Shown piece by piece: positions 1,878-47,933 of a stretch of DNA of 64,000 nt (position 1 is the stretch's first letter; each line of letters opens with the position of its first letter). Position numbers and translations under genes: made by a program. Under the pieces are notes generated by a model, which saw only the letters and a program-made list of their open reading frames with translations, had not been told where the DNA came from and ran no database searches. The DNA lies in the IMG/VR virus record IMGVR_UViG_3300007513_000004, positions 1 through 64,000 of that record, one strand, 5' to 3'.

Positions 1878-2227
1878 TGGTGGAGGCGGGCGGAATCGAA
1901 CCGCCGTCCAAAGCAACTCATACTTCAAGTCATTCACAAGCTTGTCTAGATTTTATAATCTAGCAAATCCTCCCGCTAAGTTATACCATCATATCCGCAG
2001 GATGATATGAGTCGAGTATTTTTTGTTATCAGTGATACTAGTCCACCTATCTCACGTTGGGTAACAAGGCCCTGAGAAGCCCCGGAACTATGCCGCTAAA
2101 GCGACTGGTTCGTAGTAATAATTGTTATTGGCAATTATAGTTTTTTGCAACAAGTTTTGAGTCATTCGTTACCGTAGACTGCTTGCACTATTCGCACTTA
2201 CTACCCTGTCGATACCATTTCGCCCCC
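1878..2227 (-). ncRNA. ssrA: tmRNA; tag peptide ANNNYYYEPVALAA* (2132-2088)
   Basis: 5' GGGGGCGAAATGGTATCGAC, 3' GGTTCGATTCCGCCCGCCTCCACCA, resume context ATAATT-GCC, tag ending ALAA. Confidence 0.96.
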
Positions 2228-17611: not shown

Positions 17612-17687
17612 TGGCTCCCCGAGCAGGACTTGAACCTACGACAAGGTGGTTAACAGCCACCTGCTCTACCAACTGAGCTATCGGGGA
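17612..17687 (-). tRNA. tRNA-Asn(GTT)
   Basis: cloverleaf, loop CT-GTT-AA, CCA end. Confidence 0.96.
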
Positions 17688-17692
17688 ATATA

Positions 17693-17884
17693 TCAATCAA
17701 AGCGAACCTTTTTAAGTCTTGGGTCGGCCTCTCTGCCGGTTCTATAGGGAGGTCTTTCTTCTCCCAACATATATCCCAACTCTTTTTCAAGACCTGCTGT
17801 TGACTTCCCTTTCTTTTCAAATTTGCGAATCTTGCTACTGATACGCCGAATATGTTGATTTTTTCTTTGCGCTTTACTACCCAT
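17693..17884 (-). CDS. small basic protein (paralogue of 44809-44988)
   Basis: KAQRKNQHIRRISSKIRKFEKKG.STAGLEKELG. Confidence 0.8.
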   Translation of the reverse strand: MGSKAQRKNQHIRRISSKIRKFEKKGKSTAGLEKELGYMLGEERPPYRTGREADPRLKKVRFD

Positions 17885-18018
17885 GATTTTTCCTTATTAA
17901 CTAAATTTAACTGCTGGCACCCGCCCGTCAATTCTTATCCAACCAAAATAACAATTGACAACACCAACTTTCCGCTCCTTCTGTATCAAAATATTGAGCG
18001 ACAACACTTTGAATAAAA

Positions 18019-18096
18019 TGGTAGGGCTACTCGGACTTGAACCGAGAACCTACTGCTTATGAGGCAGTTGCTCTAACCTGATTGAGCTATAGCCCT
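18019..18096 (-). tRNA. tRNA-Met/Ile2(CAT), non-initiator
   Basis: cloverleaf, loop CT-CAT-AA, no GGG/CCC anticodon stem, CCA end. Confidence 0.9.
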
Positions 18097-18127
18097 ATAT
18101 AGTATGTTTTAAACATCATAAATTTTT

Positions 18128-18203
18128 TGGTGAGCCGTATAGGACTCGAACCTATAACCTAAAGATTAAAAGTCTTTTGCTCTGCCTGTTGAGCTAACGG
18201 CCC
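18128..18203 (-). tRNA. tRNA-Lys(TTT)
   Basis: cloverleaf, loop CT-TTT-AA, CCA end. Confidence 0.96.
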
Positions 18204-27052: not shown

Positions 27053-27182
27053 ACTCGTTTAATCTATATGTCAAACTTTTGCACGAGGATATGTTGTGCC
27101 GTCGTCTGCCTTATTCCAATTACCGCCTTCTCTTCTGGCTAATTGTGCTGGAGTTAACCTGTGTTCAGGAATGTCTTTTTCT

Positions 27183-43341: not shown

Positions 43342-43646
43342 TTGTTGTCTCCCTATGTGACAATGTAACTGATGATAAAACAGAAATGAAATAATACCGT
43401 GCAAAAACTTAACATGTGTGTGCAAATCTTTTGCACGGTGGTGCAGCCTAACCCACCCTTTAGGCTGCACCGATTTTCTGCAGGGGGTAGGCCCCGTCAC
43501 ACATTACGCGCAGTTAAGATAATGCCAACCGAAGAAGACCAAGGCAGTCCAGGCTGCAACATCAATAGCTACCACAATCGGAAGCAGGGTCAAACGATGA
43601 GCTAAAACCCATTCAATAGCAGTAGTGCGCCACATAGTTTCCTCCA

Positions 43647-43967: not shown

Positions 43968-44188
43968 AACCCTCCAGGTTAGTACTCCTATGTAGCTGAT
44001 GATAAAACAGAGTTGAGATTTTTATGCAAATCTTTTGCCCAGGGCTAATTTGGTTTCTGTTTTATCATCAGCTACATAAAGACATAAGGAAAGGAACACT
44101 GTTCGCGCTGCCTCCCCATAGGGAATAAGGTGGCCGTCTGGAATCGAAAGATTAGGTTCCCAACCTTTTGACTCACAAAGGAGATTCA

Positions 44189-44446
44189 ATGTTCATCAGC
44201 GCAGAAAAGATTATTGAGCTAATTCAGGCCGCCAACGATTGTGTAGAGAGGTTGCCGGAAGCTGAACAGTGGATTCATGTTAGTGATATTGCCGCTACCC
44301 TTCAGAAGCTGATTGATGATGAAGAGGCAAGGTTGGAAACTTTGGCCGACCAATGGCACGGCGAGGAGTGGGTGGAAATCGACCTTGGGCGGGAACCAAC
44401 TGAAAAAGAGCTTGAAGTAGACTTTAACTGGCCTCATGGAGTATAA
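44189..44446 (+). CDS. hypothetical acidic protein
   Basis: AAGGAG SD; promoter 44050-44078. Confidence 0.75.
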   Translation: MFISAEKIIELIQAANDCVERLPEAEQWIHVSDIAATLQKLIDDEEARLETLADQWHGEEWVEIDLGREPTEKELEVDFNWPHGV

Positions 44447-44454
44447 GACTTTTT

Positions 44455-44530
44455 GGGTCCATAGCTCAACAGGCAGAGCGCCGGACTTTTAATCCGTAGG
44501 TTCAGGGTTCGAGTCCCTGTGGACTCACCA
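44455..44530 (+). tRNA. tRNA-Lys(TTT), second copy
   Basis: cloverleaf, loop CT-TTT-AA, CCA end. Confidence 0.95.
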
Positions 44531-44544
44531 TTTATCAAACTTTT

Positions 44545-44629
44545 GCCCGAGTGGTGGAATCGGTATACACAGCAGACTTAAAATCTGCCGCCTTTGGGCT
44601 TGCCGGTTCGAGTCCGGCCTCGGGTACCA
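44545..44629 (+). tRNA. tRNA-Leu(TAA)
   Basis: class II cloverleaf, loop CT-TAA-AA, CCA end. Confidence 0.95.
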
Positions 44630-44670
44630 AATAAATCAAATCCATTTTAACATCAATTACATTGAGTCAT

Positions 44671-44778
44671 GGGAGGGGAGAAGTAGAACGGCAAGGCCTC
44701 CAGGCGATGAGCCAACCGCTAAATGCGGCATACGGCGTCCGCCCTAAACCAATTGCTGCGCTATTGCTTCCCCCTCCC
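44671..44778 (+). ncRNA. candidate 108-nt structured small RNA
   Basis: own promoter 44635-44663; 15-bp terminal stem with one bulge; U-tract follows. Confidence 0.7.
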
Positions 44779-44808
44779 TTTTTCTTTCACCAACCAGGAA
44801 TAAATCAA

Positions 44809-44988
44809 ATGGGAAATAAAGCACAACGACAGAACCAGCACGTTCGTCGCATCAACAGCAAAATCCGCAAGTTCGAAAAGCGGGGCTGGTCTACGGCGGG
44901 GCTGGAAAAGGAGCTTGGCTTTATGCTGGGCGAGGACCGCCCTTCCTTCAAAACTGGGCGAGATGCTCGCCCAGCAGACAAGGAATAA
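44809..44988 (+). CDS. small basic protein (paralogue of 17693-17884)
   Basis: KAQRQNQHVRRINSKIRKFEKRG.STAGLEKELG. Confidence 0.8.
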   Translation: MGNKAQRQNQHVRRINSKIRKFEKRGWSTAGLEKELGFMLGEDRPSFKTGRDARPADKE

Positions 44989-44993
44989 AACAA

Positions 44994-45010
44994 CCGGGGC
45001 TTTGCCCCGG
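44994..45010 (+). terminator. intrinsic terminator
   Basis: CCGGGGC-TTT-GCCCCGG followed by a T-rich tail. Confidence 0.7.
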
Positions 45011-45049
45011 GCCTTTCTTTATCTTAAATGTCAAACTTTTGCCCGAGGG

Positions 45050-45343
45050 CTACCGAGGGAGTACCCATATATCATCGGATGAAGGATCTCCATATTGTGT
45101 ACACACGCACTTGGATCGAGTAACAGACTCCATCCTTGTTCCAAGATCATCGCACGATTGTTTACATTGAGTTATCGTAGCTTCCTTCAAATTGCAATTT
45201 GACATAAGCATCCCAGCGGTGACCGTGAGGCAAATATAGAATACAGATTTGCTGATTGCTCCAGTTACGGAGATTATCAACTGTCTGTCCGTGTCTGCAT
45301 GCTTATCCATTCCTTCCTTCCTTATACTCTCCATGAAACCCAC
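45050..45343 (-). CDS. membrane-anchored Cys-containing protein
   Basis: TM plus three-Cys ectodomain; stop abuts a box. Confidence 0.65.
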   Translation of the reverse strand: MGFMESIRKEGMDKHADTDRQLIISVTGAISKSVFYICLTVTAGMLMSNCNLKEATITQCKQSCDDLGTRMESVTRSKCVCTQYGDPSSDDIWVLPR

Positions 45344-45992
45344 AACAGTGAAAGTTTATTCCTTTAATCTGCCAATCCTGCAAAACATGATGGTGACCAA
45401 AATACCAATCCACAGGCGCATGGTCACAATAGTCCATGACATTCTGGAGATTTTTGGGGGTGGGATTGGTGTTTCGGTTGAGTCTGTCAATCTCCACACA
45501 AATTGGCGCATCATGGGTTACCACAATTTCTGGCTTCGCCATTTCCATTGACTCGAAGAATGTGTTGAATTCTGCGGCGGAGGGACTTTCCTCGGCCCAC
45601 CAAGAAACTCCTTCGACTCGATGTGCCCGGTCTGTCGATTCGGCACCTCCGAAGAAAATATGCGACTTTCCATCGAGGTCGATAGCCGAACCACGGATGA
45701 CATAAAAGCAGCCTGGCGCCAACTCCACGGTTTTGTCGGAATCTTGGGCCGCCTGCAATTCAAGCCATTTAGTCCAATTTTCATGATTTCCACCGCAGGT
45801 ATACCACGCCGGGCCGGCTCGGCCTTGCCTCTCCCTCTTTGCAAAATACTTTGCGATTGGGCAATTGCTGGCCCAAAGAGCCCCAAAGTCTCCGACTTGA
45901 ACCACAATATCAACACCTGCTGCAATAGCAGCCCGGTCAATTGCAGCAACGTCATCAACCCTGCCATGAATATCGCCAACGTAAAAAATCAC
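45303..45992 (-). CDS. calcineurin-like metallophosphoesterase
   Basis: GDIHG, GDFG, GNHE, THDAP, GHHH; promoter 46008-46036. Confidence 0.9.
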   Translation of the reverse strand: MIFYVGDIHGRVDDVAAIDRAAIAAGVDIVVQVGDFGALWASNCPIAKYFAKRERQGRAGPAWYTCGGNHENWTKWLELQAAQDSDKTVELAPGCFYVIRGSAIDLDGKSHIFFGGAESTDRAHRVEGVSWWAEESPSAAEFNTFFESMEMAKPEIVVTHDAPICVEIDRLNRNTNPTPKNLQNVMDYCDHAPVDWYFGHHHVLQDWQIKGINFHCCGFHGEYKEGRNG

Positions 45993-46101
45993 TCTGCCTC
46001 CTGTTATATGGTAACCGATGGATAAATAGAAATCAAAAAGAAATGTAAAAGTTTTGCCCGGGCTTATTTCAAATCTGTTTGAGCATCGGTTACTTTACGA
46101 T

Positions 46102-47857: not shown

Positions 47858-47933
47858 GATAGCCTCCTTCTGTCTCTATGTAACCGATGGAGAAATAGAA
47901 ATCAAAAATGTGTTGTAAAACTTTTGCCCAGGC

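What the first reader, a model, noticed from the sequence alone, without database searches (positions are those of the whole stretch)
44635..44790. 108-nt small RNA with its own promoter, long terminal stem and U-tail
Seen: -10 TACATT (44658-63) puts the TSS at about 44669-71, where GGGAGGGGAGAAGTAG begins. It pairs with 44764-44778 (15 bp, one bulged A), then CGGCAA/TTGCTG, inner hairpins GGC-GATGA-GCC and CCGC-TAAAT-GCGG, then TTTTTCTTT. Inference: rod-plus-multiloop layout recalls Y-RNA, SRP or 6S-like decoys, but I see none of their signature motifs, so it may be new.
Basis: partly seen in the sequence, partly recalled or inferred. Interest (0 to 1): 0.7.

Follow-up and report, generated by a model that had tools for sequence, protein, structure and literature searches.

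The report
New small RNA gene in marine phage
A roughly 110-base non-coding RNA gene sits next to two tRNA genes in an uncultured marine giant phage; it has its own promoter and terminator, is conserved as strictly as the tRNAs, matches no known RNA family, and its function is unknown.

Summary

**Structure.** Bases 44671-44778 (+) fold into a rod. It is closed by a 13-15 bp G-rich/C-rich helix and followed by a U-tract. The fold energy is -50 kcal/mol (z about -3.5 to -3.9).

**Homologues.**
- Thirteen marine metagenome contigs carry the element.
- They give six distinct sequences in three lineages.
- The RNA is 92-97% identical between lineages. Neighbouring protein genes are 57-77% identical and the tRNAs 89-94%.
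- Two base pairs of the closing helix changed on both sides and stayed paired.
- A 1-nt indel and frame disagreements rule out coding.

**Promoter.** The upstream 30 nt, with the -10 TACATT at 44658-63, belong to a promoter-like family. The family is repeated about 25 times in a GC-rich mosaic island at about 25-53 kb. The other copies sit just before Shine-Dalgarno and ATG. This places the start at about 44670/71.

**Stand-alone unit.** In one lineage the RNA is followed only by long U-runs and no ORF, so it can stand alone. In the window, a leaky terminator probably also feeds a conserved 59-aa ORF.

**What is missing.**
- No Rfam family matches, including Y RNA, SRP, 6S and T4 rnaC/rnaD.
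- The phage encodes no Ro or RtcB.
- No RNA-seq data hold the element, so transcription and function remain inferred.

The parts
44635..44663 (+). Promoter-like sequence of the RNA. It has a -35-like ATCAAA (44635-40), a conserved 17-nt spacer TCCATTTTAACATCAAT (44641-57) and a -10 TACATT (44658-63). The predicted start is about 44670/71.
   Evidence: The pattern TCNNTTTNNNCATCRRTTAC matches here with 0 mismatches. The window has 36 hits against 8.1 expected. Aligned copies share the consensus tTTTcAtT-TCTgTTTTAtCATCrryTAC-aTt and sit 10-25 nt before SD+ATG. Twenty of 24 strict hits lie in 25-55 kb. The sequence is conserved upstream of the RNA in all three lineages; TACATT becomes TATTAT in the L063 type.
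44671..44778 (+). Body of the small RNA, 108 nt.
   Evidence: Fold -50 kcal/mol, z -3.5 to -3.9. It is 92-97% identical between lineages while flanking genes are 57-77% identical. There is no Rfam match.
44671..44686 (+). 5' strand of the closing helix. It is purine-rich and Shine-Dalgarno-like (GGGAGGGGAG), and no start codon follows it.
   Evidence: It pairs with 44764-44778. Two pairs changed on both sides and stayed paired: G-C to A-U and A-U to G-C.
44697..44702 (+). Invariant C-rich internal loop CCUCCA. It is predicted to be unpaired and resembles an anti-Shine-Dalgarno sequence.
   Evidence: Unpaired probability is about 0.9 or higher. It is invariant in all six distinct sequences.
44716..44728 (+). 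Apical hairpin CCGC-UAAAU-GCGG.
   Evidence: The stem is invariant. The loop varies in sequence and length: UAAAU, UAAUA, UAAAUA, UUAAUA.
44744..44754 (+). Variable linker, the only interior stretch that differs between lineages.
   Evidence: Alignments A2 and A3.
44764..44778 (+). 3' strand of the closing helix (pyrimidine-rich).
44779..44787 (+). U-tract (TTTTTCTTT). Together with the closing helix it forms an intrinsic-terminator-like 3' end.
   Evidence: The tract is weaker in the lineages where the ORF follows (L044, L045, L049). It is much longer in the L063 type, where no ORF follows.
44809..44988 (+). Conserved 59-aa basic ORF (SD AGGA at 44796-99). It has no promoter of its own, so it probably depends on read-through of the RNA terminator.
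   Evidence: A family of 45 proteins at 57-98% identity, with no Pfam or PDB relative. Only about 30 nt separate it from the RNA.
44994..45010 (.). Bidirectional terminator hairpin that closes the + strand unit.
44455..44629 (+). tRNA-Lys(UUU) at 44455-44530 and tRNA-Leu(UAA) at 44545-44629, immediately upstream.
44535..44551 (+). A copy of the island's second repeated motif (TCAAACTTTTGCCCGAG). Its last 7 nt are the first 7 nt of tRNA-Leu.
   Evidence: In L045 and L049 the same motif sits directly before the RNA promoter and tRNA-Leu is absent.
44056..44078 (+). The next upstream + strand promoter-family copy. It probably drives the 92-aa ORF (44168-44446) and the two tRNAs. No terminator lies between it and the RNA.

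Best explanation
**Claim.** This is an independent small non-coding RNA gene, one cassette in a GC-rich, mosaic accessory region of an uncultured marine giant phage.

**How it is made (inferred).**
1. RNA polymerase starts at about 44670/71 from a promoter of the island's own repeated type.
2. The purine-rich first 16 nt pair with the pyrimidine-rich last 15 nt. This closes a 108-nt rod.
3. The closing helix plus the following U-tract acts as the RNA's intrinsic terminator and gives a product of about 110-117 nt.
4. In the lineages that carry the 59-aa ORF, the U-tract is weaker. Some transcripts probably read through and serve as its mRNA.

**What it does (inferred).** The functional part is the invariant interior: the internal loops CCUCCA, AUGA/GUC and AA/CAUAC. 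Nearly every interior base is fixed, not just a short seed. I therefore think it most likely works in trans as a structured RNA recognised by a protein, as a scaffold or decoy (about 0.35). A less likely mode is pairing through the exposed CCUCCA loop with G-rich ribosome-binding sites (about 0.2).

**Shown:** the structure, conservation, non-coding nature, promoter-family membership and existence as a unit without an ORF.

**Inferred:** transcription, the exact ends, leaky termination and the molecular partner.
For: - **Fold.** z is -3.5 to -3.9.
- **Homologues.** Thirteen contigs, six distinct sequences, three lineages.
- **Conservation.** The RNA is 92-97% identical between lineages. The leader is 66-85%, the adjacent ORF 77%, the upstream gene 57% and the tRNAs 89-94%.
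- **Covariation.** Two compensatory pairs lie in the closing helix, and 96% of cells are paired against 43-65% when partners are slid.
- **Variation pattern.** Differences are confined to a hairpin loop and one linker.
- **Not coding.** There is a 1-nt loop indel. The in-frame extension into the ORF exists only in the window type, is out of frame in L045, and stops after 13 codons in L063.
- **Promoter.** It is a 0-mismatch member of a family with 36 hits against 8.1 expected. Other copies lie 10-25 nt before SD+ATG, and the family is concentrated in 25-55 kb.
- **Stand-alone unit.** In L063, L065, L066 and L074 the RNA is followed by long U-runs and the next cassette. No ORF follows, and no copy of the small ORF lies within 5-12 kb.
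- **Independent of tRNA-Leu.** tRNA-Leu is absent upstream in L045, L049, L063 and L066.
- **Novel.** No Rfam family matches at E <= 10.
Against: - No transcript evidence exists. No RNA run holds the sequence, and the runs that do behave like low-depth DNA metagenomes.
- Only six distinct sequences are available and the interior is invariant. The inner structure has no covariation support and is not thermodynamically unusual on its own.
- The reverse strand folds as well.
- An 80-nt 'loop' is atypical for an intrinsic terminator, and the simple terminator scan did not call it.
- The -35-like hexamer is weak (3 of 6), and the sigma-70 scan did not call the promoter.
- No partner protein is identified. 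The phage has no Ro or RtcB, and the RNA-protein complex job was not folded.
Confidence: 0.6

Rival explanations
1. It is a cis-acting 5' leader or attenuator of the 59-aa ORF. The helix plus U-tract sets how much transcription reaches the ORF, possibly under feedback by the basic protein.
For: - In two of three lineages the ORF follows within about 30 nt and has no promoter of its own.
- U-tracts are weaker where the ORF follows.
- The phage's native paralogue of the ORF (17693-17884, - strand) is also preceded by a conserved structured spacer.
Against: - In L063, L065, L066 and L074 the RNA is kept at 96-97% identity with no ORF behind it and strong U-runs.
- A 13-15 bp G-C helix should form regardless of any ligand.
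- The native spacer shows no similarity to this RNA.
Confidence: 0.15
2. It is a base-pairing regulatory sRNA. The exposed invariant C-rich loop CCUCCA pairs with G-rich Shine-Dalgarno regions of phage or host mRNAs and blocks translation.
For: - The loop is invariant and predicted unpaired.
- mRNAs from the same promoter family carry GGAG/GGAGG ribosome-binding sites.
- A terminator hairpin plus U-tail is the usual 3' end of such sRNAs (general knowledge).
Against: - Conservation covers almost all 108 nt, not just a seed.
- Six nucleotides give no target specificity.
- The genome-wide duplex scan was uninformative.
- The host is unknown.
Confidence: 0.15
3. It is only an elaborate terminator or processing spacer at the end of the tRNA operon, with no function of its own.
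For: - It lies directly after tRNA-Leu with no terminator in between.
- The stability comes mainly from the closing helix.
Against: - The interior loops are invariant while the flanks diverge.
- It has its own promoter-family copy.
- It occurs after a protein gene without any tRNA in L063 and L066.
Confidence: 0.07
4. It is a DNA-level element, such as a recombination site or cruciform, or a miniature inverted-repeat element, rather than an RNA.
For: - It has terminal inverted repeats of 13-15 bp.
- Both strands fold equally well.
- It lies in a mosaic region with frequent cassette shuffling.
Against: - It is single-copy in the 223-kb record, and 11 related phage records have none.
- The promoter and U-tract are on one strand only and always in the same orientation.
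- No target-site duplication is visible.
Confidence: 0.03

Closest known systems
Phage T4 rnaC and rnaD (species 1 and 2 small stable RNAs)
   Same: They are small RNAs of 119-139 nt encoded directly after phage tRNA genes. Their function is still unknown although Northern blots confirm expression (PMC9697503).
   Different: The covariance model of the candidate scores nothing above noise on the T4 locus. T4 rnaC carries a tRNA-like T-arm and rnaD is weakly structured. From general knowledge, the T4 RNAs are cut out of the tRNA precursor. This RNA has its own promoter-like sequence and a terminator-like end.
Y RNA / bacterial YrlA (Ro60-Rsr partners)
   Same: Both have a rod closed by pairing of the 5' and 3' ends, conserved internal loops and a 3' U-tail. 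Some phages encode them.
   Different: No Rfam Y-RNA or YrlA match appears at E <= 10. There is no tRNA-like domain. Neither the G000 nor the G001 record encodes a TROVE or RtcB protein.
4.5S/SRP RNA and 6S RNA
   Same: Both are roughly 110-180-nt extended hairpins that work by binding a protein (Ffh, RNA polymerase).
   Different: No Rfam match. The SRP domain IV motif and the large 6S central bubble are absent from the fold.
PeSL cassettes of T4-like phages (composite promoter/terminator motifs that shuffle genes in hyperplastic regions)
   Same: The RNA is one cassette among many. The cassettes are bounded by repeated promoter-like and terminator sequences in a mosaic region whose order differs between related contigs (PMC4122927).
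   Different: The motifs here have different sequences. The phage is not shown to be T4-like. A second, strand-biased motif (AAACTTTTGCCC) has no described counterpart that I know of.
C-rich-loop sRNAs of Gram-positive bacteria (RsaE/RNAIII type)
   Same: They carry an exposed C-rich motif able to pair with Shine-Dalgarno sequences, plus a terminator hairpin (general knowledge).
   Different: No homology. Here the C-rich motif lies in an internal loop of a long rod, and the whole molecule is conserved.

Membership tests
Any Rfam 15 family (includes Y RNA/YrlA, SRP, 6S, tmRNA, tRNA, riboswitches, ribozymes, phage pRNA) | A covariance-model score at or near the family's gathering threshold | tested here: not met
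   The whole window at gathering threshold gives only tRNAs and tmRNA. For 44400-45100 at E <= 10, the only overlap with the element is a minus-strand mir-7578 hit at 14 bits against a threshold of 60.
tRNA / tRNA-like | A cloverleaf or T-arm detectable by ARAGORN or the Rfam tRNA model | tested here: not met
   call only tRNA-Lys and tRNA-Leu. There is no T-loop motif in 44671-44778.
T4 rnaC/rnaD | Sequence and structure homology to the T4 RNAs | tested here: not met
   Model R1 with filters off on the T4 tRNA locus gives a best score of 10 bits, and nothing lies on rnaC or rnaD.
T4 rnaC/rnaD | A small RNA gene immediately downstream of phage tRNA genes | tested here: met
Y RNA / Ro RNP | A Ro60/Rsr (TROVE) partner encoded nearby or in the genome | tested here: not met
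   PF05731 and PF01139 are absent from G000 and G001, and the controls were positive. The host genome is unknown.
Independent sRNA gene (promoter plus intrinsic terminator) | A promoter at the proper distance from the 5' end | tested here: met
   The -10 TACATT lies 7 nt before the first G. The sequence is a 0-mismatch member of a repeated promoter-like family found before protein genes. Promoter activity itself was not tested.
Independent sRNA gene (promoter plus intrinsic terminator) | A G+C-rich helix followed by a U-tract | tested here: met
   The feature is atypical because the helix encloses about 80 nt, and the simple scan did not call it.
Independent sRNA gene (promoter plus intrinsic terminator) | A discrete transcript | not testable with these tools
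   No RNA run holds the sequence.
Structured functional RNA | Compensatory base changes | tested here: inconclusive
   Two pairs in the closing helix are compensatory. The other 31 pairs never vary or only lose pairing. Only six sequences are available.
Protein-coding sequence | A reading frame kept between lineages | tested here: not met
   There is a 1-nt indel in the loop. The frame is out of register in L045, and a stop follows after 13 codons in L063.
Riboswitch / attenuator | Always followed by a regulated gene, with mutually exclusive helices | tested here: not met
   Four contigs have no downstream ORF. A transient GGAGG-CCUCC pairing is weak at -7.6 kcal/mol.

The most novel reading that the evidence does not exclude
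The RNA is a phage counter-defence or host-takeover decoy. In this reading it is a tRNA-grade-conserved structured RNA, carried with extra copies of tRNA-Lys(UUU) and tRNA-Leu(UAA) in a shuffling accessory cassette. It would sequester a host RNA-binding enzyme, for example an anticodon nuclease, another tRNA-targeting toxin or an RNA-processing factor. It might act together with the small basic protein encoded behind it.
Probability: 0.1. Interest if true: 0.8.

Novelty: new member of a known kind. Interest (0 to 1): 0.45.

Why it matters
Small RNAs of virulent phages are few, and their roles are mostly unknown. T4 rnaC and rnaD are still unexplained after 50 years (PMC9697503), and a survey of phiKZ found almost none (PMC8244752).

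This one is a clean candidate for three reasons.
- It has defined signals.
- It is under tRNA-level purifying selection in several lineages of uncultured marine giant phages.
- It lies in a cassette region that also carries duplicate tRNAs.

It gives a concrete, synthesisable 108-nt molecule for structure probing and partner pull-downs. The promoter family found alongside it provides a transcription map for an otherwise unannotatable accessory region.

Tried and rejected
- **Rfam.** Searched at gathering threshold and at E <= 10. Nothing matched.
- **BLAST against GenBank phages.** Only the tRNAs match.
- **Relatives through flanking proteins in IMG/VR.** The 92-aa ORF gave none. One scan was wasted on a wrong frame. 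The metallophosphatase gave two loci without the RNA.
- **Sixteen related giant-phage records found through a PrkA-like kinase.** BLAST and model R1 found no copy. The region after tRNA-Leu in relatives holds ordinary ORFs.
- **Exact-pattern scans.**
  - Viral contigs gave one chance hit.
  - Genome contigs gave one chance hit in a Rhodococcus coding region.
  - Metagenome contigs gave 28 hits, of which 9 are true homologues. The rest are high-GC coding sequences.
- **Sequencing runs.** No RNA support. Contigs laid from four runs are low-depth and DNA-like.
- **Specific hypotheses rejected.**
  - Hammerhead, K-turn, 5S-like, group II domain V and retron/DGR ideas, considered by eye. All lack motifs or partners, and Rfam agrees.
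  - Homology to the native spacer RNA.
  - Homology to T4 rnaC/rnaD.
  - A peptide-coding reading.
  - A mobile inverted-repeat element, because the sequence is single-copy.
- **The small ORF.** No Pfam, PDB or Atlas relative. A resemblance to ribosomal protein S21 or Sra recalled from memory was not borne out.
- **RNA-protein complex prediction.** The tool did not fold it, so there is no evidence either way.
- **Genome-wide duplex scan for targets.** Uninformative.
- **One script with typed sequences.** It returned nothing and was redone from files.

Full report
**1. Where the window comes from**

The window is the first 64 kb of a 223-kb IMG/VR virus record estimated to be 67% complete. It is a giant tailed phage.
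- It encodes a tail sheath, an endolysin, ribonucleotide reductase, a helicase, a CCA-adding enzyme and a PrkA-like kinase.
- It carries a tmRNA and nine tRNA genes, all inside the window.
- The runs that hold the sequence are marine or seawater metagenomes.

**2. The observation**

- The -10 TACATT lies at 44658-63.
- A purine-rich start GGGAGGGGAGAAGTAG begins at 44671.
- Its pyrimidine-rich partner lies at 44764-78.
- CGGCAA pairs with TTGCTG.
- The hairpin CCGC-TAAAT-GCGG lies at 44716-28.
- TTTTTCTTT lies at 44779-87.

The 108-122-nt stretch folds to -50 kcal/mol, with z = -3.9 or -3.5 and 0-1 of 200 shuffles as good. The fold survives when the tRNA and the ORF are included.

Three caveats apply.
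- Without the closing helix the interior is not unusually stable.
- The reverse complement folds as well.

**3. Homologues**

GenBank phages share only the tRNAs. Sixteen related giant-phage records, four of them near-complete, have no copy by BLAST or by covariance model. Downstream of their tRNA-Leu genes lie ordinary ORFs.

The breakthrough came from the 59-aa ORF that follows the element (44809-44988). It has 45 relatives in marine metagenomes. Contigs encoding the closest ones carry the RNA. A 19-mer scan of JGI metagenomes added nine more true copies among 28 hits.

In total there are 13 contigs, six distinct sequences and three lineages:
- the window type (L044, L057, L062, L068, L069, L070);
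- L045 and L049;
- L063, L065, L066 and L074.

**4. Conservation and what it says**

Identity between lineages:

| Region | Identity between lineages |
|---|---|
| RNA | 92-97% |
| Neighbouring tRNAs | 89-94% |
| 40-nt leader | 66-85% |
| 59-aa ORF | 77% |
| Upstream protein gene | 57% |

- Differences fall in the apical loop, which varies in sequence and length, and in one linker (44744-54). Two further differences lie in closing-helix pairs that changed on both sides and stayed paired: G-C to A-U and A-U to G-C.
- In the proposed register 96% of cells pair. When partners are slid, 43-65% pair.
- The other helices never vary, so they are neither supported nor contradicted.
- The element is not coding. 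The loop has a 1-nt indel.
  - Gene callers used the ATG at 44707 to make 92-93-aa products.
  - That ATG is in frame with the ORF only in the window type.
  - It is out of frame in L045.
  - It runs into a stop after 13 codons in L063.

**5. Promoter**

Reading the flanks of other intergenic regions showed that the 30 nt before the RNA are not unique.
- The pattern TCNNTTTNNNCATCRRTTAC occurs 36 times in the window against 8.1 expected. The RNA copy has no mismatch.
- Twenty-seven aligned copies share tTTTcAtT, then TCTgTTTTAtCATCrry, then TAC-aTt. They are mostly followed within 10-25 nt by a Shine-Dalgarno sequence and a start codon, on whichever strand the gene lies.
- Twenty of 24 strict hits in the 223-kb record lie between 25 and 55 kb. 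This is also the stretch with raised G+C, 0.43-0.53 against about 0.37.
- By analogy with those copies, transcription of the RNA should begin about 7 nt after TACATT, at the first G of the closing helix.
- The promoter-like sequence is kept in all three lineages. TACATT is replaced by TATTAT in the L063 type.
- Promoter activity is inferred. The simple sigma-70 scan did not call it, because the -35-like hexamer is weak.

**6. A unit of its own**

- In L063 and L066 the RNA follows a protein gene.
- In L045 and L049 it follows tRNA-Lys, with tRNA-Leu missing.
- In the window type, L065 and L074 it follows tRNA-Leu.
- In the L063 type it is followed by three long U-runs and then the next cassette. 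No ORF follows, and no copy of the small ORF lies within 5-12 kb.
- Where the ORF does follow, the U-tract is shorter or interrupted and the ORF has no promoter copy of its own.

The simplest reading is an RNA gene whose terminator is leaky where it also has to feed the ORF. A pure leader, a pure tRNA-operon terminator and a DNA-level repeat each fail on at least one of these points (see rivals).

**7. The region is a mosaic of cassettes**

- Contigs related to the island align to the window in shuffled order, at 70-97% identity.
- A second motif, AAACTTTTGCCC, often preceded by TGTC and followed by a short GCCC..GGGC hairpin, occurs 26 times in 25-53 kb. Nearly all copies are on the + strand, just upstream of the -35 side of promoters that point either way.
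- This resembles the promoter/terminator cassettes (PeSLs) described for hyperplastic regions of T4-like phages (PMC4122927).

**8. What it is not**

- No Rfam family matches at E <= 10.
- It is not a tRNA or a tRNA-like structure.
- It shows no similarity to T4 rnaC or rnaD, which occupy the analogous place after tRNA-Arg.
- The two records that together cover most of this phage encode no Ro or RtcB.
- No copy turned up in 185,579 prokaryote genomes by a 23-base gapped pattern, apart from one chance hit.

**9. Function**

Nothing here shows function.

The pattern of constraint is nearly every interior base fixed, in loops as well as stems, at the level of the tRNAs. That is what one sees in RNAs read by proteins or folded into a defined three-dimensional shape. 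It is not what one sees in antisense regulators, which conserve a short seed. I therefore favour a protein-recognised structured RNA.

One possible partner is the basic 59-aa protein that follows it in two lineages.

The exposed invariant CCUCCA loop is complementary to the GGAGG-type ribosome-binding sites used in this region. It offers a second, testable mode of action.

The RNA's own 5' end is Shine-Dalgarno-like, sits at the position where sister cassettes have their ribosome-binding sites, and has no start codon behind it. This hints that the gene arose from an mRNA leader.

**10. Verdict**

This is a real, conserved, previously undescribed small RNA gene family of narrow distribution. 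It has a well-supported gene structure and an unknown role. Expression data are the missing piece.

Noticed in passing
window 17612-18203 (- strand): A second, AT-rich 'native' copy of the module. Its order is tRNA-Lys(UUU) 18128-18203, tRNA-Met 18019-18096, a roughly 130-nt spacer 17885-18018, a 63-aa paralogue (76% identical) of the small ORF at 17693-17884, and tRNA-Asn 17612-17687. The same order recurs in L046, L050, L052-L056. The spacer holds a conserved element: AGGAGNGG, an outer helix that covaries (GGCGAA/UUCGCC, GAUGAA/UUCAUC, GUUGGUG/UGCCRRC), a variable hairpin and an invariant GGGYGGGU. It has no Rfam match and no similarity to the candidate RNA.
   Followed up: partly
window about 25000-55000, both strands (for example 43365-43384 -, 44056-44075 +, 46011-46030 -, 46074-46093 +): A promoter-like family with a conserved spacer, consensus tTTTcAtT-TCTgTTTTAtCATCrryTAC-aTt. 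It has about 25 copies, almost all within the GC-rich island, and most lie 10-25 nt before SD+ATG. Several form divergent pairs. The strongly conserved spacer suggests recognition by something other than plain host sigma-70.
   Followed up: partly
window 25856-52379, for example 27071-27087, 45031-45047, 47916-47932: The motif (TG)TCAAACTTTTGCCC, often followed by NN-GGGC. It occurs 26 times in 25-53 kb and nearly always on the + strand, whatever the direction of the neighbouring genes. It sits a few bases upstream of the -35 side of the promoter-like sequences. The strand bias is unexplained.
   Followed up: partly
window 44535-44551: One copy of that motif ends in GCCCGAG, which is also the first 7 nt of tRNA-Leu(UAA). 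In L045 and L049 the motif remains and the tRNA is gone. This suggests the tRNA was gained or lost by recombination at the motif.
   Followed up: partly
window about 28000-52000: An island of raised G+C (0.43-0.53 against about 0.37 in the rest of the 223-kb record), full of small ORFs on both strands. Related metagenome contigs carry the same cassettes in different orders.
   Followed up: partly
window 44455-44530 and 18128-18203; L037 (G001:209945-210010): Duplicate tRNAs. There are two tRNA-Lys(UUU) genes in the window, about 79% identical. A second tRNA-Leu(UAA) lies in the record whose kinase gene is identical to this phage's and which appears to continue the genome. The island copies may be recent acquisitions.
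   Followed up: no
window 44809-44988 and 45 relatives (alignment A4): A family of small basic proteins of 58-64 aa with an invariant core (GxKxQRxNQ..KI..GLEKEL..G..R..G). In the contigs examined it is embedded in phage tRNA clusters. It has no Pfam, PDB or Atlas relative. Gene callers sometimes extend it into the RNA, giving 92-93 aa.
   Followed up: partly
window 1878-2227 (- strand): A phage-encoded tmRNA (117 bits) with the tag peptide ANNNYYYEPVALAA.
   Followed up: no
G000:110494-112848 and 133545-135464 (outside the window): A 784-aa protein with an N-terminal tRNA nucleotidyltransferase (CCA-adding) domain, and a 639-aa PrkA/YeaG-like serine kinase. The kinase is shared with Thermus phages and several 0.6-Mb uncultured phages.
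   Followed up: no
window 45303-45992 (- strand): A calcineurin-like metallophosphoesterase gene. Relatives at 53% identity lie in two other viral contigs, one of them from the same metagenome as the related record G001.
   Followed up: no
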